A DNA stretch of 64,000 nucleotides from IMG/VR virus record IMGVR_UViG_3300009104_001210, positions 62,001-126,000 of that record, one strand, 5' to 3'. Shown piece by piece: positions 46,316 through 59,632 of this stretch. The notes under the pieces are model-generated. The model did not search any database. It saw only the letters and a list, made by a program, of their open reading frames with translations, and was not told the origin of the DNA. The translations under genes and the position numbers were made by a program. Numbering within the stretch: position 1 is the first letter of the stretch; each line of letters starts with the position of its first letter.

Positions 46316-48307
46316 TTGGATAAGTTTTTTTTGTCTGAAAATTTTGTAAGTAAATACAAAAGAAAAAAACCACCATTCGGTTTCAACGGTTTAGGTGAAT
46401 TAGTTTATATGAGAACTTACTCTCGTATTAAAAAAAACGGTAAAAACGAGAGATGGTGGGAAACAGTTCGTAGGGTTGTAGAAGGTACTTACTCTATGCA
46501 AAAGGCATGGATAGATCAACACCAACTCGGTTGGAATGCTTGGCAGGCTCAAGCATCAGCACAAGAAATGTACGATAGAATTTTTAATATGAAATTCCTA
46601 CCACCTGGCCGAGGTCTTTGGGCTATGGGAACACCAATTACAGAAGAAAAGAATTTATATGCAGCACTAAACAATTGTGCATTCGTATCCACTTCCACAC
46701 TTAAAGAAGATTATTCAAAACCATTTTGTTTTCTAATGGATGCCTCTATGTTAGGTGTTGGTGTTGGTTTTGACACTAAAGGTGCAGGTGAAATTGTTAT
46801 TAAAGGTGTAAACCGTGATAGAAATGAAGAAATATTTATGATACCTGATACAAGAGAAGGTTGGGTAGAATCTTTAAAGTTATTATTAGAGAGTTATTTT
46901 CATGGAACAGGGCCTATTACGTTTGACTATAATCAAATTAGAGATGAAGGTGAACCAATCAAAGGTTTTGGTGGTGTCTCAAGTGGTCATGAACCATTAA
47001 AAGAAATACATGAAGATATTCAGAATGTTTTAGAAGACAATACAGGCGAACCAATTTCAGTTACAACAATAGTAGATATAATGAATTTGATTGGTAAATG
47101 TGTTGTAGCAGGTAATGTTCGTAGAACTGCTGAGATCGTTTTTGGTGATCCAAAAAACGAAGAATATTTAAATTTAAAGAACTATAAAGTGAATCCACAT
47201 AGAGAAATGTATGGGTGGACTTCTAATAATTCAGTATTTGCTGAACTTGGTATGGATTATACAGATATCTGTAAAAGAATTGTAGACAACGGTGAACCAG
47301 GACTTGCTTGGTTACAAAATATGAGACACTTTTCTCGTATGAAAAATGGTGGAGATGACAAAGACCATAGGGTAGCAGGTGGAAATCCTTGTTTAGAACA
47401 ATCATTAGAAAGTTATGAATTATGTTGTTTAGTAGAAACATTTCCAAACAATCATGAAAATTTAGAGGATTATAAGAGGACACTTAAATATGCTTATTTG
47501 TATGCCAAGACAGTAACACTTGGTAAAACTCATTGGAGTGAAACTAATCGTGTTATGTTAAGAAACAGACGTATTGGATGTTCAGTTAGTGGTGTTGCAC
47601 AATTTATTACAAATAGAGGTTTAGAAGAATTAAGAAATTGGTTGGAGAATGGTTATGATACTATTCAAGATTGGGATTGTGTGTATTCTGATTGGTTAGC
47701 AGTACCAAAGTCAATTAAAACTACTTCAGTTAAGCCAAGTGGTACAGTTTCATTGTTAGCAGGAGCGACACCAGGACTTCATTACCCTGAGAGTCGTTTT
47801 TATATTCGTAGGATAAGACTATCCAAACATTCAGAATTAGTAACACCATTAAAAAAGGCAGGATATAAAATAGAACCCGCATTTGGTTCAGAAGATTCTA
47901 CAGTTGTTGTAGAAGTGCCAGTTGATGTAGGAAAGGGTATCAGAACTGCCGCTGAATTGTCTATTTGGGAACAATTTAGTTTAGCAGCATTCATGCAACG
48001 CCATTGGGCTGACAATCAAGTAAGTTGTACCGCAACATTTGATCCAGATACAGAAGCTGAAGAACTACCATATGTGTTGAATTATTTTCAATACAGATTA
48101 AAAGGTATATCATTATTGCCACGACACGACTTAGGTGCGTATAAACAAATGCCTTATGAAGCAATAGATAAAAAAGAGTATAATAAGCAAGTAAAACAAC
48201 TTAATAAACTAACTTTCGGTGTAATCAAAAACGAAGAGGCAGAAATAGACAAATTCTGCAATAATGATGTATGTGAAATACCAGGGGAAACTTTAGAAAA
48301 AGCTTGA
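46316..48307 (+). CDS. nrdJ: Class II (adenosylcobalamin-dependent, monomeric RTPR-type) ribonucleotide reductase
   Basis: RTYSR, PPGRGLW, NNCAFVST, GGNPCLEQSL, CCLVE, TSVKPSGTVS and C-terminal CNNDVC. Confidence 0.92.
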   Translation: MDKFFLSENFVSKYKRKKPPFGFNGLGELVYMRTYSRIKKNGKNERWWETVRRVVEGTYSMQKAWIDQHQLGWNAWQAQASAQEMYDRIFNMKFLPPGRGLWAMGTPITEEKNLYAALNNCAFVSTSTLKEDYSKPFCFLMDASMLGVGVGFDTKGAGEIVIKGVNRDRNEEIFMIPDTREGWVESLKLLLESYFHGTGPITFDYNQIRDEGEPIKGFGGVSSGHEPLKEIHEDIQNVLEDNTGEPISVTTIVDIMNLIGKCVVAGNVRRTAEIVFGDPKNEEYLNLKNYKVNPHREMYGWTSNNSVFAELGMDYTDICKRIVDNGEPGLAWLQNMRHFSRMKNGGDDKDHRVAGGNPCLEQSLESYELCCLVETFPNNHENLEDYKRTLKYAYLYAKTVTLGKTHWSETNRVMLRNRRIGCSVSGVAQFITNRGLEELRNWLENGYDTIQDWDCVYSDWLAVPKSIKTTSVKPSGTVSLLAGATPGLHYPESRFYIRRIRLSKHSELVTPLKKAGYKIEPAFGSEDSTVVVEVPVDVGKGIRTAAELSIWEQFSLAAFMQRHWADNQVSCTATFDPDTEAEELPYVLNYFQYRLKGISLLPRHDLGAYKQMPYEAIDKKEYNKQVKQLNKLTFGVIKNEEAEIDKFCNNDVCEIPGETLEKA

Positions 48308-48333
48308 CAAGTACCTGGTTTTTGTCGTATATT
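48304..48333 (+). promoter_or_regulatory. Sigma70-like promoter upstream of the family B polymerase
   Basis: TTGACA (48304-48309), N18, TATATT (48328-48333). Confidence 0.7.
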
Positions 48334-48360
48334 CAGATATCAAATTGAAGAGGTATAGTC

Positions 48361-50862
48361 ATATATCAAAATATCTTTTATCAGATAAGTAAAAGTAGAA
48401 TACATATTTGGGATGATAAAAAAGGATATGCAGTTTATCCATTTAAACCATATGCTTATATAAAAGACTCAAAAGGTACGTTTACTTCTTTATATGGTGA
48501 TAAGGTAAGAAGAATTGCTAAATCACAAATAGAAGAATATGATACTTCTTTTGAATCTGATGTGTTAGCAGAAACAAGGTTTTTAGTAGATAACTATACA
48601 GATTCAGATGATGTATCAGAGGGTCATAGAGTTATGTTTTTTGATATTGAAGTAGAGGTTACAGAAGGTTTCCCTTCAGTAGAAAAAGCTGACAATGCAA
48701 TTACTTCTATTGCTTTATATGATAAATTAACTAAAGAATATCATTGTTATGTACTTGACGCTGAAAATGCAGTTAATAGTGAAAATTTTGATAATGCTAC
48801 AGTAATAAAGTTTAAAGAAGAGAGAGATTTATTAAATAAATTTTATCAAAAATATCTTGAGATATCACCAACAATTATTAGTGGTTGGAATAGTGATAGA
48901 TTTGACATTCCTTATTTATATAATCGTTCTCGGAGGTTATTAGGTGAGGATGTTGCTAAATGTTTATCACCAATAGGTATTGTAGACTATAATAAACATA
49001 GAGGTGCTTATAAAATAGCAGGTGTATCTAGCTTAGATTATCTTGAACTATATAAAAAACTTACTTTTGGTGAAAGGTCTTCATATAGATTAGATGATAT
49101 TGGAAATTATGAAGTAGGTATAAAAAAAGTTTCATATGATGGTACATTGGATGATTTATATTATAATAATAGGAATAAGTTTGTAGAGTATAATATAAAT
49201 GACGTTGTTATTCTTGAAAAACTTGATGAGAAGTTAGATTTTATTGGTATTGCTAGAGCTATTTGTCATTTGGGTCATGTTCCATATGAAGATGTATATT
49301 ATTCATCACGATTTTTAGAAGGTGCTATTCTTGTATATCTTAAAAAACTTGATATTGTTGCGCCAGATAAGAAAAAAGTAAATAAAGAATTAATGAACAA
49401 TGGTGATAAGTTTTCAGGAGCATATGTACAAGAACCAATAAAAGGTAGACATGAGTGGATTTATGATTTAGATATTACTTCAATGTATCCATCAATTATT
49501 ATGACATTGAATATTTCTCCTGAAACAAAACTTGGAAGGTTAACAGGTTGGAATTCAGAAGAATTTGTTAAAGGAGTAGATAAAACATATACTATAGAAG
49601 ATGATTCAGGAAAAGAAAGTGCTAAACTAACTACAGCAGAGTTTAAGAACTTTTTAAAAAATAATAATGTATCTGTATCTACTAATGGTGTGTTATATAC
49701 ACAAGATAAAAGAGGGTTAATTCCAACTTTGTTGGAAAAATGGTTTGATGATAGAGTAGAATTTAGAAAATTAGCAAAGAAGTTCGCTGAAGAGGGTGAT
49801 AAAGAGAAATATGCATACTTTGATAGACGACAGTATATTCAAAAGGTTGTTCTAAATTCATTGTATGGTGTGTTGGGTTTACCTGTGTTTCGTTTTTATG
49901 ACTTAGATAATGCAGAAGCAACAACGACAACGGGTGTTGAGTTAATTAAATATACTAAGAAGATAGCTAATTATTATTATAATTCTGTTTTGGAAGATTC
50001 GGAAGATCATTGTATATACATTGATACAGATTCAGTTTTTTATTCTGCTGTTTCTATGATTCAAAAGAAATATCCACACATTAATATTAAAGATGAAAAT
50101 CTAATGATGGATAAGATTTTAGATATTGCCTCAGAGGTTCAAGAATATTTAAATAGTTCATATGATTTATTTGCTAAAAAGTTTCTTAATGTAGATAAAC
50201 ATAGATTTGAGATTAAGCAGGAATTGATTGCTAGAAGTGGGTTATTTGTTACAAAGAAAAGATATGGATTGAAAGTTGTTAATGATAATGGTGTTAAGAT
50301 AAATAAACTTCATGTAAAAGGTTTAGATATTGTTCGTTCAAGTTTTCCAATAGCTATGAAAGAATGTTTAACAAAAGTATTAGAAGATATATTAGCAAAT
50401 GTACCTCAGAATAAGATTAATGAGTTTATTCTTAATTTTAAGAAATCTATGAAGTTGAAAAACTATGATACTATTGCAATGCCAACTTCAGTTAAAAATG
50501 TTAAAAAATATGTTCAGAGGGGTGATGGTAGATTGTTAGCTAAAAAGGGTGCACCTGTTCATGTTAAATCAGCAATAAATTATAATAACTTTTTATTGTC
50601 AAGTAAACTTGAAGCAAAGTATCCTTTAATTGGAAACGGTGAAAAGATTAAGTGGACTTATCTAAAAGACAATCCATTTAAATTTGAGACTTTATGTTAT
50701 AAAGGACATGAGGATCCTCAACAAGTGTTAGATTATATAAAAGAGTATATTGATACCGATAAGATATATAAGCAAGCACTTAGTAAAAAAATAGTAATGT
50801 TATATGATGCATTAAAATGGGAAGAACCAAATGATGATTTTGGTTTTAATAAATTCTTTTAA
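48361..50862 (+). CDS. Family B DNA polymerase (gp43-like); probable ATA start
   Basis: FFDIEVE exonuclease motif, DITSMYPS, KVVLNSLYG, YIDTDS, KKRY; frame extends 67 codons upstream of ORF-track start 48562 to ATA TAT CAA AAT preceded by SD GAGGT. Confidence 0.93.
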   Translation: MYQNIFYQISKSRIHIWDDKKGYAVYPFKPYAYIKDSKGTFTSLYGDKVRRIAKSQIEEYDTSFESDVLAETRFLVDNYTDSDDVSEGHRVMFFDIEVEVTEGFPSVEKADNAITSIALYDKLTKEYHCYVLDAENAVNSENFDNATVIKFKEERDLLNKFYQKYLEISPTIISGWNSDRFDIPYLYNRSRRLLGEDVAKCLSPIGIVDYNKHRGAYKIAGVSSLDYLELYKKLTFGERSSYRLDDIGNYEVGIKKVSYDGTLDDLYYNNRNKFVEYNINDVVILEKLDEKLDFIGIARAICHLGHVPYEDVYYSSRFLEGAILVYLKKLDIVAPDKKKVNKELMNNGDKFSGAYVQEPIKGRHEWIYDLDITSMYPSIIMTLNISPETKLGRLTGWNSEEFVKGVDKTYTIEDDSGKESAKLTTAEFKNFLKNNNVSVSTNGVLYTQDKRGLIPTLLEKWFDDRVEFRKLAKKFAEEGDKEKYAYFDRRQYIQKVVLNSLYGVLGLPVFRFYDLDNAEATTTTGVELIKYTKKIANYYYNSVLEDSEDHCIYIDTDSVFYSAVSMIQKKYPHINIKDENLMMDKILDIASEVQEYLNSSYDLFAKKFLNVDKHRFEIKQELIARSGLFVTKKRYGLKVVNDNGVKINKLHVKGLDIVRSSFPIAMKECLTKVLEDILANVPQNKINEFILNFKKSMKLKNYDTIAMPTSVKNVKKYVQRGDGRLLAKKGAPVHVKSAINYNNFLLSSKLEAKYPLIGNGEKIKWTYLKDNPFKFETLCYKGHEDPQQVLDYIKEYIDTDKIYKQALSKKIVMLYDALKWEEPNDDFGFNKFF

Positions 50863-50913
50863 TTTGGAGAAATAATATGATACTTATATATATGTATATA
50901 AAGGAGTTACAAA

Positions 50914-51645
50914 ATGGATAAACAAACGTTGATGGGATTCATCAATAGGTTTTATTTAGGTGGGCAAACTCAATCAGCACCTGTAAAATCAACAAAAGAC
51001 ACACTTAGTTGTGCATTTATCAACTCAGCAAAAAGTTGTGTTGGTGATATTGTTTTAGCTAAGAATGGAATTGGTGATTATGAAATGGGGCTGTATGAGA
51101 TTCAAGACTTAATTAAACTAATTAGTGTATTGGATGGTGATATGGATGTTGATGTTAAAACTGTAGGTGAAGTAGCATCACAGTTAGTCCTTTCACAAAA
51201 AAATACTAAAGCAAGAATAAATTATGGTCTTGCTAGATTGGATGTAGTTCAGAAGAAACCAGATTTATCAAATGTTCCTGAGTTCACATTAGAACTTAAA
51301 CTTGATAAGAAGTTCATTAGCACATTTATTTCAGGTAAAAGTGCGTTAAGTGAAGTTGCAACATTTGCTGTATTAGCAGATGGTAAAGAAGCAAAGGTTG
51401 TAATAGGTTATAGTTCTACAACACAATCTAATAAAGTTACAATCCCTGTAGAATGTAGTAAAGTAGATAGTTTTGAAGAGGCTGTATTATTTGATGCAGA
51501 TACTTTCAAAGAGATATTACTTGCTAACAGAGATTGTGAATCTTCAACTCTTTACATTTCAGATAAAGGGTTAGCTAAAGTTAATTTCAAGGTAGATAAT
51601 TTCGATTCTACATACGTACTAGTTGCAAAAACAACAGTAGACTAA
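50914..51645 (+). CDS. Sliding clamp (gp45-like)
   Basis: 243 aa, beta-rich; directly after the polymerase, with the clamp loader nearby; SD AAGGAG. Confidence 0.7.
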   Translation: MDKQTLMGFINRFYLGGQTQSAPVKSTKDTLSCAFINSAKSCVGDIVLAKNGIGDYEMGLYEIQDLIKLISVLDGDMDVDVKTVGEVASQLVLSQKNTKARINYGLARLDVVQKKPDLSNVPEFTLELKLDKKFISTFISGKSALSEVATFAVLADGKEAKVVIGYSSTTQSNKVTIPVECSKVDSFEEAVLFDADTFKEILLANRDCESSTLYISDKGLAKVNFKVDNFDSTYVLVAKTTVD

Positions 51646-52397
51646 TGGAAAATACTGTAGATAAATCAAAAGTTTATCTACAAGAGATAGACAAAAAGAC
51701 TGCGAAGGAAATGATTGTAAAACATCATTATTCGCATAGAGGTTCTTCTTGTAGATACGCTATAGGAATATATTATAAGTCAGATAATCCTCATCCTTTT
51801 TTTAAGGATACGAGTGAGGAAAAACTCATTGGGTGTATGACTTATGGTTATCCTGTAGGAAGAACTGTATTGGGATCTATGTTTAATGAAAACGTTAAAT
51901 TAGAAACTAATAATATTTTGGAATTGACAAGATTATTTATACATGATGGTTATGGTAAAAATATTGAATCATATTGTATTTCTCAATCATTTAAATGGTT
52001 GAAAAAACATGATGAAAATGTTAAAACATTAATAAGTTATGCAGATCCTGATGTATTACATTTAGGTGGTATTTATAAAGCTACTAATTGGTTGTATCAG
52101 GGTGCAGGATTAAATTTAATGCCAAATTATTCAATATCTTTAACAAAGGATCCATATGAATGGATACATAGTAGAACTGTTTCATCAAGATTTGGTAGTC
52201 ATAATATAATAAAGTTAAAAGAAGCAATTGGACATACGTTTTGGAGAAGAAGAGAACCTGAAAAACATAGGTACATTTACTTTTTGGGTAGTAAAAAAGA
52301 GAATAAAAAGTTTATGAAGAATTTGAAGTATGAAACTAAACCGTATCCTACAAATGCAGAAGAGTATTTACCGCCAATAGAAGAACATAAAGTATGA
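51645..52397 (+). CDS. Mom-like (GNAT-fold) DNA adenine modification protein, copy 1
   Basis: IVKHHYSHR, LIGCMTYG, LELTRLF, ESYCISQSFKWL, LISYADP..HLGGIYKATNWLYQG. Confidence 0.78.
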   Translation: MENTVDKSKVYLQEIDKKTAKEMIVKHHYSHRGSSCRYAIGIYYKSDNPHPFFKDTSEEKLIGCMTYGYPVGRTVLGSMFNENVKLETNNILELTRLFIHDGYGKNIESYCISQSFKWLKKHDENVKTLISYADPDVLHLGGIYKATNWLYQGAGLNLMPNYSISLTKDPYEWIHSRTVSSRFGSHNIIKLKEAIGHTFWRRREPEKHRYIYFLGSKKENKKFMKNLKYETKPYPTNAEEYLPPIEEHKV

Positions 52398-53119
52398 ACT
52401 TAGATAAAAAACAATTATCTGACAATGGTTATCTATTTTTTGAATTAGATGATAATGATAAAGAGATATTAAAATCTTTGAGAGACGAATATTTAAATTA
52501 TGGTAATATAATATGTGCGACTTTTAAATATCTTCATAATGATTTAAATTTTAGTTTAAATATAACACCTGGAGTAACTAGCTATGCTAATTTTTCTTCA
52601 CTATTTGATGATATAGTAGAATGGCGTAGAGTTCAAGATGAAATTGATTCTATTACAAATATGAATTCATATTTATACGATGCGAGATGTGAAGTTGGTG
52701 GAGATTTTACAAGTTTACACTCACTATTAGAAAATATTTATAACACAAGTTATTCTACTGAAGAAAAAATAATAACAACAGCAGATGGATCTTGTAGTCA
52801 AAATTTAAAATTTGATATTAATGGTAGAATAATGATTGCTAAAATGTTATTATCTACCCATCGTGATGGATCATATGTTGAGGAAAATATAGCTTCTTAT
52901 AAAAGACCATGTACTATGTTGATTTATACAAATGAAGATTGGAAACCTGGTGATGGTGGTGAATTAGTAGTAGAAGGTGAAGTTTTAGAACCAACTTTAG
53001 GTAATGCAGCTATATTAGATTTTACACAAGGTAATGATGTTGAACATGGTGTTAATCCAGTTTTAACAGATTTTGTAAGAAAAAGTTTTACAATATTTGT
53101 TGATAAGAAAGAGTTTTAA
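52394..53119 (+). CDS. 2OG-Fe(II) oxygenase (prolyl-hydroxylase-like)
   Basis: HxD (THRD), LIYTNEDWKPGDGGEL, distal H (EHGVNPV) and RKS. Confidence 0.78.
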   Translation: MNLDKKQLSDNGYLFFELDDNDKEILKSLRDEYLNYGNIICATFKYLHNDLNFSLNITPGVTSYANFSSLFDDIVEWRRVQDEIDSITNMNSYLYDARCEVGGDFTSLHSLLENIYNTSYSTEEKIITTADGSCSQNLKFDINGRIMIAKMLLSTHRDGSYVEENIASYKRPCTMLIYTNEDWKPGDGGELVVEGEVLEPTLGNAAILDFTQGNDVEHGVNPVLTDFVRKSFTIFVDKKEF

Positions 53120-53122
53120 AAT

Positions 53123-53464
53123 ATGAATAAATTATTAGCAGCTATGATATTGTCTGTATTGGGGCATATAATAGCATTTTTTCACATGAATGCACAGTTT
53201 AAATGGGAATGGGCTAAATCTCAATGGTGGGTAATATTAGTAGGGCTTCCAATAAGTTATCTATTTTATTATTCAACAAGATATTCATTTGAATATTTTG
53301 GATATTATTGGAACATAAGATTGATTGGTTTTGGTATGGGAACATTTATATTTGGTTTAATGACGTGGGGAATATTAGGAGAAGCACCAAATGCGAAAGT
53401 TATGGTAAGTTTAGCTTTAGCATTAATAATAATTTTAATACAAATGACTAATGTGGTGAAATGA
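53123..53464 (+). CDS. Small 4-TM membrane protein (DMT/SMR-like)
   Basis: Four hydrophobic segments in 113 aa; GEAP loop before the last helix. Confidence 0.6.
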   Translation: MNKLLAAMILSVLGHIIAFFHMNAQFKWEWAKSQWWVILVGLPISYLFYYSTRYSFEYFGYYWNIRLIGFGMGTFIFGLMTWGILGEAPNAKVMVSLALALIIILIQMTNVVK

Positions 53465-54033
53465 AAGTTAAAACAAGAATAGGTATAGATATAGATGGAG
53501 TGCTTAGAGATTTTTCTTGGCAATTACATAACTATATGTCCGTTAATTACCCCGAATCAATTATAAAAGATGCTATAGATGATTGGGATTATCAGAATTG
53601 TTTTAAAGGTTGGGATAAAAAATCTTTACAAGAATTATATTGGGATAAGTATCCAGAATTGTTTTTTAGAGATTCACCACCTATATATGGTGCTATAGAA
53701 CAAATGCATGCTTTATTTGAGTGGGGTAGTGGAAAAGGTTATAAATTTGTTTGTATATCTTCTCAGAGAACACCAGGAACTTATGCTTCTTTAGAGTGGT
53801 TGGGAAAACACGCATTAAGTTTTAGAGAAGTATATTTTGTTAGTGGTAGTGATAAGTGGAAAATAGATGTTGATTGGTTAGTAGATGATTCACCATCCAA
53901 TTATCAGGCTTGGTTAAAGGGTAGAGGTGATGATTACGGATATATTTTAATGGATGCACTATATAATCAACACATTAAACCTACTAATAGGGTAAAAGAA
54001 TTAAAAGAGATAAAGGAAATAATAGAATGGTAA
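53461..54033 (+). CDS. HAD-family 5'(3')-deoxyribonucleotidase
   Basis: GIDIDGVLRDF motif I; WLVDDSPSN motif IV; YNQH. Confidence 0.82.
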   Translation: MKVKTRIGIDIDGVLRDFSWQLHNYMSVNYPESIIKDAIDDWDYQNCFKGWDKKSLQELYWDKYPELFFRDSPPIYGAIEQMHALFEWGSGKGYKFVCISSQRTPGTYASLEWLGKHALSFREVYFVSGSDKWKIDVDWLVDDSPSNYQAWLKGRGDDYGYILMDALYNQHIKPTNRVKELKEIKEIIEW

Positions 54034-54944
54034 ATCATAGTTTATGGGTAGAACAGTATAGACCAACTGAATTAGAAAACTATGTTGGTAATACACATTT
54101 AAAATCTAAGGTAGAAGCTTATCTTACAAATAGTGATATTCCTCATTTATTATTATATGGAAGAGCAGGTACAGGTAAAACAACACTTGCTAAACTGATT
54201 GTTAAGAATATTAAATGTGATTATCTATACATTAATGCTAGTGATGAGAATAATGTAGAAACTGTAAGAACAAAAGTAAAACAGTTCGCATCTACGATTG
54301 GTTTTACAGATATGAAGGTAATTATCTTAGATGAATGTGATTACATTACACCTAACGCACAAGCCGCTTTGCGTAACCTTATGGAGACTTTTAGTAAGTA
54401 CTGTAGGTTTATTCTAACCTGTAACTATGCAGAGAGAATCATTAATCCGATACAAAGTCGTTGTCAAATTTTTGAAATTATACCACCATCTAAGACAGAA
54501 GTAGCTCAAAGATTGAATCAGATTTTAAAAGAGGAAGGTGTTAAACACGAGTTAGAAGATTTAAAAATATTGATTGATTCTAATTATCCTGATATTCGTA
54601 GAACAATTAACGCAGCTCAAAGAAATGTGGTTGATTTACAATTAAAATTAGATGTAGAGAGTATTACTCAAAATGATTATAAGTTAAAAGTGTTAGATAT
54701 TTTAGAGAATCAAGATAAGAAAAACGCATTTAAAAATATAAGACAGTTATTAGCAGATAATGCTATTAGAGACTTTTCAGATTGTTTTCGTTTGTTATAT
54801 GATAATGTAGATTCTTATGGTAAAGGTCATATAGCAGAAATAATATTAATATTAGCGAGATATGAACTATCAGATAGCCAGGTAGTTGATAAAGAAATAA
54901 ACTTTATGGCTATGTTAATTGAAGTATTGGGAGTTATAAAATGA
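54027..54944 (+). CDS. Clamp loader AAA+ subunit (gp44/RFC-like)
   Basis: LWVEQYRP, GRAGTGKTT, INASDE, ILDECD, FILTCNY, IQSRC. Confidence 0.93.
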   Translation: MVNHSLWVEQYRPTELENYVGNTHLKSKVEAYLTNSDIPHLLLYGRAGTGKTTLAKLIVKNIKCDYLYINASDENNVETVRTKVKQFASTIGFTDMKVIILDECDYITPNAQAALRNLMETFSKYCRFILTCNYAERIINPIQSRCQIFEIIPPSKTEVAQRLNQILKEEGVKHELEDLKILIDSNYPDIRRTINAAQRNVVDLQLKLDVESITQNDYKLKVLDILENQDKKNAFKNIRQLLADNAIRDFSDCFRLLYDNVDSYGKGHIAEIILILARYELSDSQVVDKEINFMAMLIEVLGVIK

Positions 54945-55195
54945 GTACAAAACCAATGAAACCACTAAAGAAACCAGCACAAAAGGTTGATTTATCACAA
55001 GCAGATACTATGAAATGTGAGAAATGTTCTAATTATCTTTTTATCACATCATATGTATTAAAAAGAATATCTGCTTTAATATCACCCACAGGGCAAGAAG
55101 GTATAGTTCCAATTCAAGTTTATAGTTGTGGTAATTGTGGCCATGTACCTGCTAAGTTAATGGAAGGTAGTGGAGTTGAAGAAGAACTTAGTTAA
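54941..55195 (+). CDS. Small zinc-ribbon protein
   Basis: CEKC...CGNC. Confidence 0.7.
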   Translation: MSTKPMKPLKKPAQKVDLSQADTMKCEKCSNYLFITSYVLKRISALISPTGQEGIVPIQVYSCGNCGHVPAKLMEGSGVEEELS

Positions 55196-55670
55196 GAGAA
55201 AAGGATTATTCGATCATATTAAGCACATAACATCTGTACAAAGTTCCAATTATTGGGATACTATTACAGATGAAGATAAGAAAACGTGGTCGAATTATAT
55301 GGTTCATAGATTTTTATCTATGAGAACAGATTTTTTAGATGTGGTGAACGAGATACAGATGTATAATTTATCACCAGAAATAATATATAAATTTTATTCT
55401 GATATTATTCCAAAGGGAAAATATTGGTTAAAATATATTAAAGGGAGAAAACAAATGGATTATCCAAGATGGTTGTTAGATGTTGTGGCAAAAGAGTTAG
55501 AGGTAAGTTTAAGAGAAGCTGTAGATGCAGTTGATATGTATATGTTAACTGAAGGTGGTCAAGTAGAACTTACTGAGTTGTTACAATCATATGGTGTAGA
55601 TCGCAAGAAGTTAAAAGAAGTGGGCTTGCAATCTGATACTTGGTTAAGTGAAATCAAAGAAGACGAATGA
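55170..55670 (+). CDS. Clamp loader small subunit-like protein (gp62-like)
   Basis: LFDHIKHIT...WSNYMVHRFLSM...WLKYIKG; adjacent to the gp44-like gene; exact start uncertain. Confidence 0.55.
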   Translation: MELKKNLVKRKGLFDHIKHITSVQSSNYWDTITDEDKKTWSNYMVHRFLSMRTDFLDVVNEIQMYNLSPEIIYKFYSDIIPKGKYWLKYIKGRKQMDYPRWLLDVVAKELEVSLREAVDAVDMYMLTEGGQVELTELLQSYGVDRKKLKEVGLQSDTWLSEIKEDE

Positions 55671-56305
55671 GTTTAGACGGTTATACCGTAGATCAAGTAC
55701 CTAGAAAATCCATTCAATCCTTTATAGAAAAGTATCATTATAGTCATAGTTGTAATGGTATACAAGGTTTAGAATGTTTTGCTTTGTTTAGACCAGGTAA
55801 ATTTAATATACCTGAAATGGTAGGTGCTATGATGTATGCTATACCATCAATGCCAAATACGGCTAAGAAGTATAATCCTATAAATCCCGATAGATGTGTA
55901 GAATTGAGAAGATTAGTTAACGTAGATGAGGCTCCCCCGAATAGTGAAAGTTTTTTTGTAGGAAAAACTATTAAATGGTTAAGACAAAATACAAATTATG
56001 AAGTTATAGTTTCCTTTGCAGATTTACACTATGGACATTCAGGAGTTATTTATAGAGCTAGTAATTTTGAATATGTCGGACAAACATCTCCAGGTAGAGT
56101 TTTAATGGTAGATGGTAAGGAATATCATAGTAGGTCTTTAAGTCAACCGATTAAACCATACAGTAGAGAAATTAGACGTAGGTGGGAAGCTAAAGATCCT
56201 AATATATTTTTTGTAAACAGAAAGTGTAAAAATATTTATGTTTATTATTTGAACAAAGGTATTAAGAAGAAGATAAAAAGAATAGAAGCTAATGAAAAGA
56301 ATTAG
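55667..56305 (+). CDS. Mom-like (GNAT-fold) DNA adenine modification protein, copy 2
   Basis: FIEKYHYSH, VGAMMYA, VELRRLV, SESFFVGKTIKWL, IVSFADLHYGHSGVIYRASNFEYVG. Confidence 0.78.
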   Translation: MSLDGYTVDQVPRKSIQSFIEKYHYSHSCNGIQGLECFALFRPGKFNIPEMVGAMMYAIPSMPNTAKKYNPINPDRCVELRRLVNVDEAPPNSESFFVGKTIKWLRQNTNYEVIVSFADLHYGHSGVIYRASNFEYVGQTSPGRVLMVDGKEYHSRSLSQPIKPYSREIRRRWEAKDPNIFFVNRKCKNIYVYYLNKGIKKKIKRIEANEKN

Positions 56306-57155
56306 TTATAGTCAATACAGCCAATGGGCTGTGTGTCCTCATAAATGGAAATTAAATTATATAGATGAATTGAGGACATTTAAGGGTAATATACATACGT
56401 TGTTTGGTTCTGCTATGCATGATGTATTACAGACTTATTTAACTATAATGTATAATGATACAATTAAGAAAGCTGATTCATTACCATTAGCAGATATGTT
56501 ACTACATCGAATGAAACATTACTACAAAGAAATAGTAAAAGATTTACATGGTGAGGAAATATCAAGTCAAGAAGAAATGCAAGAATTTTATGTACATGGT
56601 ATGGCTATAATAGAATGGTTTGTTAAGAAAAGAGGAATGTATTTTAATAAAAAAGGATATGAGTTAATAGGCATTGAAGTTCCTATTGAATATAAATTAC
56701 CGAATGATATTGAGTTTGTTGGATATATAGATGTTCTTTTATACGATACTGTAAGAGATAAGTATAAAATCATAGATATCAAGACTTCCACAATGGGTTG
56801 GAATAAGTGGGCTAAAGCAGATAAGACTAAGACAGATCAATTATTATTATATAAACAGTTCTATGGTGCTCAACATGATATACCATTGGATAAGATTGAG
56901 ATAGAGTATTTTATTGTAAAACGTAAACTATATGAGAAAGTAGATTTCCCTCAACGTAGAGTACAAACTTTTGTACCTGCAAATGGAACACCAAGTCTTA
57001 ATAAAGTTACACGTAATGTTAAATCTTTTATTGATGAATGTTTTATTGGTGGAGAATACAACCAATCACATATTTATAGAAAAGAAGCATCAAAGAAAAA
57101 TTGTAGATTCTGTGAGTTTAATCAAACTGAATATTGTGATGCAGGAGTCAAATAA
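56292..57155 (+). CDS. PD-(D/E)XK nuclease (RecB/Cas4-like)
   Basis: ISYSQ...CP, GSAMH, FVGYIDV, IIDIKTS, QLLLY, CRFCEF...C. Confidence 0.85.
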   Translation: MKRISYSQYSQWAVCPHKWKLNYIDELRTFKGNIHTLFGSAMHDVLQTYLTIMYNDTIKKADSLPLADMLLHRMKHYYKEIVKDLHGEEISSQEEMQEFYVHGMAIIEWFVKKRGMYFNKKGYELIGIEVPIEYKLPNDIEFVGYIDVLLYDTVRDKYKIIDIKTSTMGWNKWAKADKTKTDQLLLYKQFYGAQHDIPLDKIEIEYFIVKRKLYEKVDFPQRRVQTFVPANGTPSLNKVTRNVKSFIDECFIGGEYNQSHIYRKEASKKNCRFCEFNQTEYCDAGVK

Positions 57156-57157
57156 AT

Positions 57158-57613
57158 ATGTACAATAGATATAATGTAGGTTTAAGATTACCATTACATT
57201 CTTTTATAGGAGCTGATTGTGAATCAGAAATAATTGCAAAAATAGAAGATTCTTATACAAAAATACCAGTGAATTGGGAATTACATATGTGGTTTGATGA
57301 TAATCAAGTAACATACAAAGAAGTATCAGAATTTACAAAGAAACACGAAGATAGTTTTAAATACAGAACATTTATAAAAGCAAAAGATGCTTGTCAAAAT
57401 CCAAATTATTATGTTCAGTTTGAGGTAGAAGATATAAATAATCCTATGATAGATAAGTCAAATCAATGTACATCAAATCACAGATTTAAATATAGTATAC
57501 TATCAGGTGGACAAATAATAAAGGGATTAGATAAGTTTATTGAAATAAGTAATTTTATTCTCACAGTAAATGAAAGGACTAGTTATAAACCAAGAAAGAA
57601 ATATGAACGTTAA
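57158..57613 (+). CDS. Hypothetical protein
   Basis: 151 aa intact ORF in the operon. Confidence 0.55.
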   Translation: MYNRYNVGLRLPLHSFIGADCESEIIAKIEDSYTKIPVNWELHMWFDDNQVTYKEVSEFTKKHEDSFKYRTFIKAKDACQNPNYYVQFEVEDINNPMIDKSNQCTSNHRFKYSILSGGQIIKGLDKFIEISNFILTVNERTSYKPRKKYER

Positions 57614-58010
57614 AATAGCAATTGTTGGATCAAGGGATTATACAAATAAATCAAAGATTAAAGATTTTATTTATAAATTAAAAGAGGAACATGGAAAATT
57701 AATAGAAATAGTTAGTGGTGGAGCAAAATATGGTGCGGATAAGTATGCAAGGAAATATGCATTGGAATTTAATATGAAATATACAGAGTTTCCACCATAT
57801 CACGAACCACATAACATATATTGCGTAGAAAATAGATTTAAGTATGATAAAAAGTATAATGTTAAACATTATTTTATAAGAAATGAGGAAATTGTAAAGT
57901 ATTCTGATGCAGTTATTGCATTTATTACTGATGGGGAAATGTCTTCAGGAACAAATAATACTATAGGTCATGCTAAAAGACATAAGAAAAAATATATACT
58001 AATTTCTTAG
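57603..58010 (+). CDS. SLOG-superfamily (YspA/DUF2493-like) protein
   Basis: KIAIVGSRDY, IVSGGAKYGADKYA, RNEEIVKYSD..IAF, SSGTNNTI; start set at ATG 57603. Confidence 0.8.
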   Translation: MNVKIAIVGSRDYTNKSKIKDFIYKLKEEHGKLIEIVSGGAKYGADKYARKYALEFNMKYTEFPPYHEPHNIYCVENRFKYDKKYNVKHYFIRNEEIVKYSDAVIAFITDGEMSSGTNNTIGHAKRHKKKYILIS

Positions 58011-58037
58011 TATATTCATATTTATATATATACATGA

Positions 58038-58244
58038 ATGGAGTTACTACATATGGAAAGTAAATTAACGTCGGTTAAAGTTCTTACCGATTTATATAAA
58101 AAATTCAAAACTAAGAGCATAGAGGATGAGTTTACACTTCAAAAATTGGTAAATCGCTCAATGGACTTATATTGTCATGATATGAGTTTTGAAAAAGTTA
58201 TCAATGAATATTCAAACTTAATACAAAGCGGCAGTAGATACTAA
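58038..58244 (+). CDS. Small ribbon-helix-helix-like putative regulator
   Basis: KLTSVKV (strand), LYKKFKTKS (helix), TLQKLVNRSMDLY (helix); first gene after an ATATTTAT motif. Confidence 0.5.
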   Translation: MELLHMESKLTSVKVLTDLYKKFKTKSIEDEFTLQKLVNRSMDLYCHDMSFEKVINEYSNLIQSGSRY

Positions 58245-59632
58245 TGCCAAAGAAGAAAATCCTCTTACTGTCAGATGACCTACGAATGTCTAGCGGGGTT
58301 GGAACAATGTCAAGAGAATTTGTCATGGGAACTATACATCATTACGATTGGGTACAGTTAGGTGGTGCTATAAAACATCCTGAAGAGGGCAAAGTTGTAG
58401 ACATGAATGAATCTGTTAGAGAAGAAACAGGTGTTGAAGATGCTAATCTTAAAATATTTCCTATCAATGGGTATGGTAATGAAGAGTTAATAAGACAATT
58501 AATGTTTCACGAACGACCCGATGCCATTTTGCATTATACCGATCCAAGATTTTGGCAGTGGTTATATCAAATGGAACATGAAATTAGACAAAATATACCT
58601 ATTTTTTATTATAATATATGGGATGATTTACCTTATCCATTTTATAATGAAAACTATTATGAATCTTGTGATTTGATTATGAACATATCTAGACAGACAG
58701 ATAATATTGTTAGGAATGTTTGTAGGAATAAACCAAGAACTGATTGGGATTGTACTTATGTTCCTCATGGTATAAATGAGAAATGGTTTCATCCTATAGA
58801 TAAAAGTCATGAAGACTATTCAAATTTACAAAAGTTTAGAAATCATATTTTTAATAATAAAGATTATAAATTTGTAGTTTTTTGGAACAACAGAAATATT
58901 CGTAGAAAATTGCCTGGTGATGTTGTTATGGCATTCAAGACATTATGTGAAATGGTAGGTGAAGAAAATCATAAACATTGTGCATTAATTATGCACACAT
59001 CACCTATAGATGATAATGGTACAGATTTACCTAAACTTATAGATCATTTATTACCTGCCAGTATAGGAGATAATATATATTTTTCACATGATAAGTTAGA
59101 TAATAAACAAATGAATTTTATGGTTAATGTAGCAGATGTAACAATTAATATAGCATCTAATGAGGGATTTGGATTAGGTACTTGCGAATCATTGATGGCA
59201 GGAACACCAATTGTTGTGAATGTTACAGGTGGATTACAAGATCAATGTGGGTTTAAAAAGGAAGATGGTTCGTATCTTACTGTAGACGATTATACAGATG
59301 AATTTCAATCAAATCATACAGGTCGTTATAAAGATCATGGTGAATGGGTAAAACCTATATGGCCCGCTTGTCGTTCACTACAAGGTTCACCACCTACACC
59401 ATATATTTTTGATGATAGACCAAAATTTGAAGAAGCAGGAGAAGCTTTGAAATATTGGTATGATATGACACCTGAGAAGAGAAAAGAATGTGGTTTAAAA
59501 GGTATGGAATATGTTAAACGTGAGGATATTGGTATGACGGCTGAACATATGAGTAACAGATTTATAAAAGATATGGATACTGCATTTGATAAATGGGAAC
59601 GACGTAAACGATACGCCATGTATAAGGTATAG
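58244..59632 (+). CDS. Glycosyltransferase, GT-B fold (GT4-like)
   Basis: ILLLSDDLRMSSGVG, YVPHGI, NRNIRRK, ASNEGFGLGTCESLMAGTP. Confidence 0.88.
   Translation: MPKKKILLLSDDLRMSSGVGTMSREFVMGTIHHYDWVQLGGAIKHPEEGKVVDMNESVREETGVEDANLKIFPINGYGNEELIRQLMFHERPDAILHYTDPRFWQWLYQMEHEIRQNIPIFYYNIWDDLPYPFYNENYYESCDLIMNISRQTDNIVRNVCRNKPRTDWDCTYVPHGINEKWFHPIDKSHEDYSNLQKFRNHIFNNKDYKFVVFWNNRNIRRKLPGDVVMAFKTLCEMVGEENHKHCALIMHTSPIDDNGTDLPKLIDHLLPASIGDNIYFSHDKLDNKQMNFMVNVADVTINIASNEGFGLGTCESLMAGTPIVVNVTGGLQDQCGFKKEDGSYLTVDDYTDEFQSNHTGRYKDHGEWVKPIWPACRSLQGSPPTPYIFDDRPKFEEAGEALKYWYDMTPEKRKECGLKGMEYVKREDIGMTAEHMSNRFIKDMDTAFDKWERRKRYAMYKV

What the first reader, a model, noticed from the sequence alone, without database searches (positions are those of the whole stretch)
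50914..56305. Two divergent Mom-like genes, each translationally coupled to a clamp or clamp-loader gene
Seen: Mom-like copy 1 starts in the sliding-clamp stop (TAATG, 51643-51647). Copy 2 starts in the stop of the gp62-like gene (ATGA, 55667-55670). The two share motifs (HYSH, ELxRL, S[YF]AD, G.IY[KR]A.N) but are highly diverged. Known: Mu Mom is a GNAT-fold protein that converts adenine to N6-(1-acetamido)adenine and protects against restriction. Inference: a replisome-tethered DNA hypermodification system in which the paralogues have different sequence specificities or act as a two-step or heteromeric enzyme.
Basis: partly seen in the sequence, partly recalled or inferred. Interest (0 to 1): 0.72.

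Follow-up and report, generated by a model that had tools for sequence, protein, structure and literature searches.

The report
Two Mom DNA-modification paralogues in replisome operon
An uncultured 216-kb marine phage carries two old, divergent and apparently active copies of the Mom adenine-hypermodifying enzyme inside its DNA-replication operon. Related phages keep two or three such copies, but nothing found here ties the enzymes physically to the sliding clamp.

Summary
Window 51645-52397 (Mom1, 250 aa) and 55667-56305 (Mom2, 212 aa) are both strong Pfam Mom (PF25680) members. Both give AlphaFold models (pLDDT 90) whose best PDB match is the phage Mu Mom crystal structure. Both keep H58, Y59, R111, S124, D149 and Y159 of Mu Mom, and both are under purifying selection (dN/dS about 0.1-0.2). 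They share only 29% identity and fall in different Mom subfamilies: Mom2 groups with the Moms of ICP1, Darwin and PMBT8, and Mom1 with a Polaribacter phage Mom. The TAATG and ATGA overlaps are real, but 114 of 219 same-strand gene junctions in this genome overlap. Relatives place their Mom genes at other junctions of the same operon, and neither Mom carries the pol-type "..KFF" tail. "Replisome-tethered" is therefore unsupported.

What stands out is that 27 related contigs keep clamp-Mom1 ... gp62-Mom2, and more distant relatives carry 2-3 tandem Mom paralogues. None of about 260 cultured-phage records with a Mom match shows more than one copy.

Best reading: two independently active, non-redundant, aminoacyl-tRNA-dependent adenine-N6 modifiers that are co-transcribed with the replisome and probably differ in target context. 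This is a new variant of a known kind, of moderate interest.

The parts
48304..48333 (+). Best sigma-70-like promoter match (TTGACA-18-TATATT), upstream of the polymerase gene. It is a candidate start of the transcription unit that holds both Mom genes.
   Evidence: 11 of 12 matches. No terminator-like site anywhere in 48000-58500. This is a consensus match only.
48562..50862 (+). Family B DNA polymerase (T4 gp43-like). Its C-terminus ends ..FGFNKFF, a probable clamp-binding tail.
   Evidence: 48% identity to the Microcystis phage Mel-JY01 PolB. (the tail is conserved as ..[KR]FF or FF[SGA]F in 40 or more relatives).
50914..51645 (+). Sliding-clamp-like protein (gp45 position). Its stop overlaps the Mom1 start.
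   Evidence: No Pfam hit. Profile A3 gives the RB69 clamp 1b77 at E=0.0085 and T4 gp45 at E=0.52. Atlas features point to gp45-slide_C/PCNA clusters at 0.94-0.95. Synteny pol-clamp-gp44 as in Mel-JY01.
51645..52397 (+). Mom1: Mom-family GNAT enzyme, 250 aa, of the subfamily shared with Polaribacter phage P12002L.
   Evidence: PF25680 at 1.5e-47. PDB 8bv8 at 1.5e-7 by sequence. AF2 pLDDT 90, with Foldseek best match 8bv8 at E=6e-14. Catalytic residues kept. dN/dS 0.09-0.13.
52394..53119 (+). 2OG-Fe(II) oxygenase. A strain-variable accessory gene, not an obligatory Mom partner.
   Evidence: PF13640 at 8.8e-9. Absent from the 99-100% identical contig L005/L085. A contig joint 52392->53117 is seen in a marine metagenome run.
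53123..53464 (+). Small hydrophobic (membrane-like) protein. Present only in the close relatives.
   Evidence: 69-81% identity in the loci that carry it; absent from the more distant type-A contigs.
53461..54033 (+). NT5C-like 5'(3')-deoxyribonucleotidase. Variable accessory gene.
   Evidence: PF06941 at 1.3e-15. 34-48% identity in the relatives that carry it, and absent from several.
54027..54944 (+). Clamp-loader large subunit (gp44-like AAA+).
   Evidence: PHROG 168 at 3.7e-82. Pfam AAA, DNA_pol3_delta2 and Gp44_lid.
54941..55195 (+). Conserved 84-aa zinc-ribbon protein between gp44 and gp62. It is part of the replisome backbone and is not a Com analogue.
   Evidence: CxxC...CxxC. Only weak Zn-ribbon Pfam hits. 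Present in all relatives, including the Mom-less Mel-JY01.
55170..55670 (+). Clamp-loader small subunit (gp62-like). Its stop overlaps the Mom2 start.
   Evidence: PHROG 225 at 2.2e-14. Pfam Phage_clamp_A at 24 bits, below its 27-bit cut-off.
55667..56305 (+). Mom2: Mom-family GNAT enzyme, 212 aa, of the subfamily shared with the Moms of ICP1, EniLVp02, Darwin and PMBT8.
   Evidence: PF25680 at 4.6e-38. PDB 8bv8 at 1.5e-11. AF2 pLDDT 90.1, with Foldseek best match 8bv8 at E=5e-13 and TM 0.70-0.73. Tree UFBoot 92. dN/dS 0.09-0.21.
56292..57155 (+). PD-(D/E)XK nuclease. Conserved downstream border of the Mom2 slot.
   Evidence: PF12705 at 1.9e-19. Synteny.

Best explanation
Mom1 and Mom2 are two separately functional members of the Mom family. 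They come from two old subfamilies and sit as accessory genes in two variable slots (clamp|gp44 and gp62|PD-(D/E)XK) of one long, tightly packed replication operon. By homology with phage Mu Mom, each is expected to take an aminoacyl group (glycine in Mu) from a charged host tRNA and put it on N6 of adenines in double-stranded phage DNA after replication. The resulting bulky adduct blocks host restriction enzymes.

They are made together with the replisome simply because they lie in the same transcript. The start/stop overlaps give ordinary translational coupling, as at half of this genome's gene junctions.

The two copies are kept because they are not redundant. Most likely they recognise different sequence contexts around the target adenine, and possibly different aminoacyl-tRNA donors, so that together they cover more of an AT-rich genome.

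Shown: family membership, fold, retained catalytic residues, purifying selection, conserved co-occurrence, multi-copy relatives, and generic overlaps. Inferred: the chemistry, the DNA target, the anti-restriction role, and different specificities.
For: - Family and fold: Pfam 162 and 131 bits. Sequence hits to Mu Mom 8bv8. AF2 models with pLDDT 90 whose best PDB match is 8bv8, followed by GNATs.
- Active site: H58, Y59, R111, S124 and Y159 (Mu numbering) are invariant in 124 Mom sequences from this phage group, and D149 is kept in both window copies. These residues are required or important in Mu Mom (PMC13219725; PMC7261163).
- Insertion: helical insertions lie at the place of Mu's essential HTH-like insertion. 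Both proteins are basic, pI 9.2 and 9.6.
- Selection: dN/dS is 0.09-0.21. Across relatives, Mom1 (54-62%) and Mom2 (60-81%) are conserved as well as pol (57-63%) and better than the clamp (38-42%).
- Co-retention: 27 distinct IMG/VR contigs keep clamp-Mom1 ... gp62-Mom2.
- Multi-copy relatives: two genomes rated complete (252 and 271 kb) carry exactly two tandem copies, and another contig carries three.
- Different subfamilies: the split has UFBoot 100, and Mom2 groups with the ICP1, Darwin and PMBT8 Moms at 92.
- Where they differ: the 32 columns conserved in both groups with the same residue include all of these functionally important residues. The 23 group-specific conserved differences lie in peripheral loops (Mu 89-98) and in or around the insertion (9 in Mu 164-220).
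- Target context: only 9.2% of this genome's adenines lie in Mu's SAS context.
- No Dam, D12 or N6_N4 methyltransferase family was found in the genome.
- The operon has no terminator-like site in 48000-58500.
Against: - No biochemical or modification data exist for this phage. The only public runs found were held as assembled contigs, so no raw reads or kinetic signal could be examined.
- R151, essential in Mu Mom, is D in Mom1 and H in Mom2 and is variable across the group. The detailed mechanism or substrate handling may therefore differ.
- W48, needed for Mu Mom dimerisation, is K in both.
- Different specificity is inferred only from retention and from where the sequences differ. The enrichment of differences in the insertion region is weak (9 of 23 sites in about a quarter of the protein).
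- The nearest cultured relative, Mel-JY01, does without any Mom.
Confidence: 0.6

Rival explanations
1. Heteromeric enzyme: Mom1 and Mom2 form a heterodimer in which the two subunits contribute different DNA- or tRNA-binding surfaces. Neither is fully active alone.
For: - Mu Mom works as a tight homodimer, and the monomeric W48A variant is nearly dead (PMC13219725).
- Mom1 and Mom2 always co-occur in the 27 contigs of this architecture.
- Related phages keep 2-3 paralogues side by side.
Against: - Every cultured phage with a Mom match has a single copy (263 and 240 records, one place each), including close Mom2-type relatives. The family therefore works without a paralogous partner.
- Both copies keep a full set of catalytic residues, so neither looks like a pseudo-enzyme scaffold.
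- The two genes are 3.3 kb apart, not adjacent.
- Mom2 appears to have been exchanged independently of Mom1. It is 80-81% identical in L086-L089, where Mom1 is 61% and gp62 is 35%.
- Not tested by complex prediction.
Confidence: 0.12
2. Replisome-tethered modification: the Moms bind the sliding clamp or the clamp loader and modify DNA directly behind the fork. The gene overlaps would ensure matched stoichiometry.
For: - Adjacency clamp->Mom1 (gap -1, 0 or +3) and gp62->Mom2 (-4 or -8) is conserved in all contigs of this architecture.
- Neither Mom has a clear Shine-Dalgarno sequence of its own.
- Mu Mom acts post-replicatively on dsDNA.
Against: - Overlaps occur at 114 of 219 junctions genome-wide, and several neighbouring genes also lack an SD.
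- In more distant relatives the Mom genes lie upstream of pol, between gp44 and the Zn-ribbon gene, before PD-(D/E)XK, or next to RNR. In L021 a Mom1-type gene occupies the Mom2 slot.
- The polymerases of the group end in a conserved ..[KR]FF-type tail. Neither the termini of the window's Moms nor those of their orthologues carry anything like it.
- Mu Mom and the active metagenomic homologues work in E. coli without any phage clamp (PMC13219725).
Confidence: 0.05
3. Different chemistry or target: one paralogue uses another aminoacyl-tRNA (giving a different adduct) or acts on something other than phage dsDNA, such as RNA, tRNA or host DNA.
For: - R151, essential in Mu, is replaced differently in the two copies (D and H).
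- The copies belong to different subfamilies, and no member of either has been characterised in the papers I could read.
- GNATs that use or modify tRNA are structurally close (AtaT, TacT-like toxins among the Foldseek hits).
- The authors of PMC13219725 state that donor and substrate could not be predicted from structure.
Against: - All residues around the acyl-transfer centre that are conserved in the family are identical in the two copies.
- Both keep the DNA-binding-type insertion and basic tails.
- At least two randomly chosen metagenomic homologues are called 'active' in the Mu-type assay (PMC13219725).
Confidence: 0.15
4. Simple redundancy or dosage: the two genes do the same thing at the same sites. 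The second copy is a passenger acquired by lateral transfer into a variable slot.
For: - Both slots are variable regions that also hold come-and-go genes (2OG oxygenase, nucleotidase).
- Mom2 shows signs of lateral exchange.
Against: - Redundant copies are not expected to be kept at 29% identity, each under dN/dS of about 0.1-0.2, across lineages whose polymerases have diverged to about 60% identity.
- Independent lineages keep 2-3 old paralogue lines.
Confidence: 0.08

Closest known systems
Bacteriophage Mu Mom (PDB 8BV8; Silva et al. 2026, PMC13219725; Karambelkar et al. 2020, PMC7261163)
   Same: - Same Pfam family (PF25680).
- Same GNAT fold with a helical insertion after the core.
- Same H58/Y59, R111, S124, D149 and Y159.
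- Basic protein.
- Expected same reaction type: aminoacyl-tRNA-dependent acylation of adenine N6 in dsDNA, giving restriction evasion.
   Different: - About 20-23% identity.
- Lacks Mu's first ~28 residues.
- R151 (essential in Mu) is D or H, and W48 (dimer contact) is K.
- No Com-type translational regulator and no Dam/OxyR-type late control: the genes sit inside a lytic phage's replication operon.
- Two copies per genome instead of one.
Single-copy 'Mom-like DNA modification proteins' of cultured phages (Vibrio ICP1 gp102, Vibrio EniLVp02, Corynebacterium Darwin gp67, Staphylococcus PMBT8; Polaribacter P12002L gp53; Listeria A511 gp178)
   Same: - Mom2 is 42-45% identical to the ICP1, EniLVp02, Darwin and PMBT8 proteins and clusters with them (UFBoot 92).
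- Mom1 is 46.5% identical to the Polaribacter phage protein.
   Different: - Those phages have one copy each, at unrelated genome positions.
- None of them is experimentally characterised in the papers I could read.
Mom in the cyanomyovirus S-SCSM2R (PMC12801897) and Mom-REase fusions of jumbo phages (PMC7824862)
   Same: Mom-family genes in large marine or T4-like and jumbo phages, interpreted as counter-defence.
   Different: - S-SCSM2R has a single mom, reported as the first in a cyanophage.
- Jumbo-phage Moms are typically fused to a restriction-endonuclease-fold domain.
- Here there are two stand-alone paralogues and no nuclease fusion.

Membership tests
Mom family (Pfam PF25680; prototype phage Mu Mom) | Significant match to the family profile above the curated cut-off | tested here: met
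   Mom1 scores 162.3 bits and Mom2 131.3 bits against a cut-off of 27.1. PHROG 1384 matches at 1e-45 and 1.5e-50.
Mom family (Pfam PF25680; prototype phage Mu Mom) | GNAT fold most similar to the Mu Mom structure | tested here: met
   AF2 models have pLDDT 90.0 and 90.1. Foldseek's best PDB match is 8bv8 (E=6e-14 and 5e-13, TM 0.60-0.74), followed by GNAT acetyltransferases.
Mom family (Pfam PF25680; prototype phage Mu Mom) | Mom-specific helical (HTH-like) insertion after the GNAT core (Mu 175-209), essential for activity | tested here: met
   HMMER alignments to 8bv8 run through the insertion. The models have helices at 176-183 and 188-195 (Mom1) and at 155-158 and 164-174 (Mom2) at the equivalent place. 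Its shape differs between the copies.
Mom family (Pfam PF25680; prototype phage Mu Mom) | Functionally important residues R111, S124, D149 (plus H58, Y59, Y159) | tested here: met
   All are present in both copies. H58, Y59, R111, S124 and Y159 are invariant in 124 related sequences.
Mom family (Pfam PF25680; prototype phage Mu Mom) | R151 (R151A is inactive in Mu) and W48 (dimer interface) | tested here: not met
   R151 is D in Mom1 and H in Mom2 (G/K/H/E/D across the group). W48 is K in both. These appear to be Mu-lineage features rather than family-wide ones.
Mom family (Pfam PF25680; prototype phage Mu Mom) | Gly-tRNA(Gly)-dependent formation of 6-NcmdA on dsDNA, and restriction protection | not testable with these tools
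   Needs expression plus LC-MS or SMRT sequencing. The only public runs found were held as assembled contigs.
Mu-type mom regulation (Com zinc-finger translational activator) | Small Com gene overlapping the mom start | tested here: not met
   The upstream genes are the clamp and gp62. The nearby 84-aa Zn-ribbon ORF gave only weak matches (E>=0.011) to generic zinc-ribbon and unrelated Pfam families, none to a Com family. It is also present in the Mom-less phage Mel-JY01.
Clamp-binding replisome clients (T4 gp43/gp55/gp33-type C-terminal clamp-interaction tail) | Terminal hydrophobic or aromatic clamp-binding motif like that of the cognate polymerase | tested here: not met
   The polymerases of this phage group end ..[KR]FF or FF[SGA]F. 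The termini of Mom1 and Mom2 orthologues show no such motif: Mom2 ends in a K/R-rich helix and Mom1 in an acidic tail.

The most novel reading that the evidence does not exclude
The 2-3 Mom paralogues kept by this large group of abundant, uncultured marine phages form a combinatorial hypermodification system. Each paralogue would write its adduct in a different sequence context. In the more radical version, each would draw a different amino acid from a different charged tRNA, so that the virion DNA carries two or three distinct adenine hypermodifications. This would be the first case of specificity diversification within the newly defined tRNA-dependent DNA-modifying GNATs.
Probability: 0.4. 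Interest if true: 0.7.

Novelty: new variant of a known kind. Interest (0 to 1): 0.45.

Why it matters
Mom has only just been shown to be a tRNA-dependent DNA-modifying GNAT (2026), and nothing is known about what sets its DNA-sequence or aminoacyl-donor specificity. This marine phage was detected in metagenome runs of 12 studies. It and its relatives offer natural sets of two or three divergent, co-retained paralogues with identical catalytic cores and different peripheral loops and insertions. That makes a ready-made comparison for mapping specificity determinants. If the paralogues write different marks or motifs, they would show how a phage with an AT-rich genome extends protection against restriction. 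They could also supply new sequence-specific DNA-labelling enzymes. The replisome-tethering idea, which made the finding look more exotic, is not supported.

Tried and rejected
- **Complex prediction, clamp trimer plus Mom1.** The tool returned 'no answer' (score 0.15, mark 0.34). This is not evidence for or against binding.
- **Modification signal in public reads.** All 24 runs found are Logan contigs, not raw reads. Laying four of them showed only strain variation and the 2OG-gene indel, and nothing about base modification.
- **Supplement of PMC13219725.** I looked there for the sequence of the active 'Mom Homolog A', whose source metagenome 3300002484 also yielded contig L099 carrying both Mom types. 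The supplement is not held, so that link stays a lead only.
- **Megablast of the locus against cultured phages.** No match.
- **Mel-JY01 184-aa ORF after gp62 as a diverged Mom.** Rejected, and there is no Mom anywhere in that genome.
- **Clamp-Mom fusion by frameshifting at the overlaps.** Considered by eye; I saw no slippery heptamer at either junction. Not pursued.
- **The 2OG oxygenase as a second-step enzyme.** Rejected as obligatory, because a 99-100% identical strain lacks it.
- **Phage-encoded tRNA-Gly.** None found. The genome's five tRNAs are Glu, Tyr, Ala, Cys and Thr.
- **psbA, to place the host.** Absent.
- **Enrichment of paralogue-specific residues in the HTH-like insertion.** Only weak: 9 of 23 sites.

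Full report
**What is there.** The stretch 48.5-57.2 kb of the window is a run of co-directional, tightly packed genes. In order they are:
- family B DNA polymerase (48562-50862);
- a clamp-like protein (50914-51645);
- Mom1 (51645-52397);
- a 2OG-Fe(II) oxygenase (52394-53119);
- a small hydrophobic protein (53123-53464);
- an NT5C-like nucleotidase (53461-54033);
- gp44-like clamp-loader ATPase (54027-54944);
- an 84-aa zinc-ribbon protein (54941-55195);
- gp62-like clamp-loader subunit (55170-55670);
- Mom2 (55667-56305);
- a PD-(D/E)XK nuclease (56292-57155).

These names rest. Upstream lie gp32-like, RecA/UvsX-like, 5'-3' exonuclease, DnaB-like helicase and class II RNR genes. No terminator-like site occurs in 48000-58500, and the best promoter-like match lies just upstream of pol. 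The window is part of a 216,422-bp, 31% GC IMG/VR virus rated 100% complete. It was detected in marine and seawater metagenome runs of 12 studies.

**Check of the observation.** The TAATG (51643-51647) and ATGA (55667-55670) overlaps and all four shared motifs are present.
- Both proteins are unambiguous Mom-family members: PF25680 at 162 and 131 bits against a cut-off of 27.1, and PHROG 1384.
- They are 29% identical to each other.
- They are the only Mom genes in the genome.
- Both match the Mu Mom crystal structure chain by sequence.
- AlphaFold models built on alignments of relatives are confident (pLDDT 90.0 and 90.1). Their best PDB match is 8bv8 (E=6e-14 and 5e-13), followed by ordinary GNATs.

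**Are they likely to be active?** I verified Mu numbering on the Mu genome itself and aligned 124 Mom sequences from this phage group.
- H58, Y59, R111, S124 and Y159 are invariant, and D149 is kept in both window copies. These are the residues whose mutation reduces or abolishes Mu Mom activity (PMC13219725; PMC7261163, which numbers them 10 lower).
- R151, essential in Mu, is not conserved here (D in Mom1, H in Mom2).
- The Mu dimer-interface W48 is K in both.
- Both copies have a helical insertion where Mu has its essential HTH-like insertion, and both are basic.
- Against orthologues of about 80% identity, dN/dS is 0.09-0.13 for Mom1 and 0.09-0.21 for Mom2, although dS is near saturation.

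**Is the coupling to clamp and clamp-loader genes special?** As a sequence feature it is not. With a crude ORF-based gene set, 114 of 219 same-strand junctions in this genome overlap, 29 by one base and 33 by four. Ten of the fourteen junctions between pol and the glycosyltransferase gene overlap. Lack of a clear Shine-Dalgarno sequence is shared with several neighbours.

The adjacency is nevertheless conserved. Scans of IMG/VR with each Mom and tblastn mapping of the window's proteins on the 121 fetched loci give 27 distinct contigs with pol-clamp-Mom1-(0-3 accessory genes)-gp44-Zn ribbon-gp62-Mom2-PD-(D/E)XK. This holds down to about 57-63% polymerase and 38-42% clamp identity. The junction distances are -1, 0 or +3 for clamp->Mom1 and -4 or -8 for gp62->Mom2.

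The comparison also shows that position is not tied to the clamp or loader.
- The nearest cultured relative, Microcystis phage Mel-JY01, has the same backbone and no Mom at all.
- More distant uncultured relatives carry their Mom genes as tandem pairs or triplets upstream of pol, between gp44 and the zinc-ribbon gene, just before the PD-(D/E)XK gene, or next to RNR.
- One contig, L021, has a Mom1-type gene in the Mom2 slot.
- The polymerases of the whole group end in a conserved ..[KR]FF-type tail, the expected clamp-binding peptide. Neither Mom nor any of their orthologues has anything similar at either end.

I therefore read the two positions as variable slots of the replication operon in which accessory genes are carried. 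Co-expression with replication is the functional consequence.

**What is unusual.** The two copies are not a recent duplicate. In an IQ-TREE analysis with cultured-phage Moms, rooted on Mu, Mom2 clusters with the Moms of Vibrio ICP1 and EniLVp02, Corynebacterium Darwin and Staphylococcus PMBT8 (UFBoot 92). The split between that side (plus the Listeria and Proteus phage Moms) and the Mom1 side has support 100. Mom1-type sequences are sister to the Polaribacter phage P12002L Mom, with weak support of 61.

Within the Mom1 side there are at least four old paralogue lines, each tied to a position in a tandem array. Whole contigs confirm the copy numbers: two genomes rated complete, of 252 and 271 kb, have exactly two tandem copies. 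A 140-kb contig has three plus a weak fourth match, and two others have two each.

By contrast, tblastn of either copy against 50,697 cultured-phage records finds 263 and 240 records, always with a single matching place. The papers I could search describe single Mom genes or Mom-nuclease fusions only. Both Moms are conserved about as well as the polymerase, and much better than the clamp or gp62. Mom2 looks laterally exchanged in one lineage: it is 80-81% identical in L086-L089, where gp62 is 35% and Mom1 61%.

**Mechanism proposed.** Silva et al. 2026 (PMC13219725) show the following for Mu Mom:
- it alone transfers glycine from Gly-tRNA(Gly) to N6 of adenine in dsDNA, at SAS motifs;
- an on-base rearrangement then gives 6-NcmdA;
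- the enzyme is a homodimer;
- the HTH-like insertion and the adjacent basic cleft are modelled to bind DNA.

By homology I propose that Mom1 and Mom2 each carry out this type of reaction on newly replicated phage DNA, using charged host tRNA. The phage has no tRNA-Gly.

The 32 alignment columns conserved in both orthologue groups with the same residue include all of these functionally important residues. The 23 positions that are conserved within each group but differ between them lie mainly in a loop (Mu 89-98, 5 sites) and in or around the insertion (Mu 164-220, 9 sites). That pattern fits the same chemistry with different substrate recognition, but the enrichment is weak.

Only 9.2% of this genome's adenines are in Mu's SAS context, and 45% are in WAW. 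This gives a rationale for more than one specificity. No Dam, D12 or N6_N4 methyltransferase family was found in the genome. All of this paragraph beyond family membership is inference.

**Rivals.**
- **Heteromer.** A Mom1-Mom2 heteromer is possible, since Mu Mom is a dimer and the two always co-occur. It is disfavoured because single-copy Moms are the rule elsewhere, both copies keep complete active sites, and Mom2 shows independent exchange.
- **Clamp tethering.** This has no support beyond adjacency. The one complex-prediction job gave no answer and is not counted either way.
- **Different donor or non-DNA target.** This cannot be excluded for one copy, given the R151 replacements and the lack of any characterised subfamily member.
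- **Plain redundancy.** This is hard to reconcile with long co-retention under purifying selection.

**Verdict.** The genes themselves are new members of a known family. The conserved two-to-three-paralogue arrangement in a widespread group of large marine phages appears undescribed and is a new variant of a known kind. Interest is moderate at 0.45. It offers a directly testable handle on specificity in a just-defined enzyme class, but there is no evidence yet for a new mechanism.

Noticed in passing
window 52394-53119: The 2OG-Fe(II) oxygenase gene right after Mom1 is a presence/absence polymorphism. A 99-100% identical contig (L005/L085) lacks exactly this gene, and one marine run holds a contig joint 52392->53117. 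Relatives carry only 30-43% identical 2OG genes in the same slot.
   Followed up: partly
window 54941-55195: An 84-aa zinc-ribbon ORF (two CxxC pairs) lies between the gp44-like and gp62-like genes. It is conserved in every relative, including Mom-less Microcystis phage Mel-JY01. It has no family assignment and may be an uncharacterised clamp-loader accessory.
   Followed up: partly
window 50836-50862 (pol C-terminus) and relatives L004-L119: All polymerases of this phage group end in a conserved ..[KR]FF or FF[SGA]F tail, a likely clamp-interaction peptide. It could be used to search for other clamp clients in these genomes.
   Followed up: partly
L086-L089 (IMG/VR contigs), Mom2 slot: Mom2 is 80-81% identical to the window's copy, although the flanking gp62 is only 35% identical and Mom1 61%. 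This suggests lateral exchange of Mom2 into the same slot.
   Followed up: no
L021:1148-1900: A Mom1-type gene, not a Mom2-type gene, occupies the gp62|PD-(D/E)XK slot in this contig.
   Followed up: no
L011, L022, L030, L036/L037, L100/L101 (pol genes): The polymerase match is split into two pieces in several relatives. This is compatible with an intein, intron or homing-endonuclease insertion, or with a frameshift.
   Followed up: no
window 57570-58010 and 58244-59632: Downstream of the nuclease gene lie a SLOG/DprA-like protein (PF02481, PF10686, PF12694) and a GT4 glycosyltransferase with a weak hit to 'GT4 in conflict systems'. Both are conserved in relatives and could be a further nucleic-acid modification or counter-defence function.
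   Followed up: no
G000:C1:166246-167375 (outside the window): A cluster of five tRNA genes (Glu-TTC, Tyr-GTA, Ala-TGC, Cys-GCA, Thr-TGT), with no tRNA-Gly.
   Followed up: no
whole window: TATAAATA, the T4-type late-promoter motif, occurs 26 times against 15.8 expected. Most copies lie on the minus strand, although nearly all genes are on the plus strand.
   Followed up: no
G003:C1:42844-43290 (IMG/VR contig of L037): Besides three tandem Mom genes, this contig has a weak, sub-threshold Mom match (26.5 bits) inside a 573-aa open frame. It may be a Mom-domain fusion protein.
   Followed up: no
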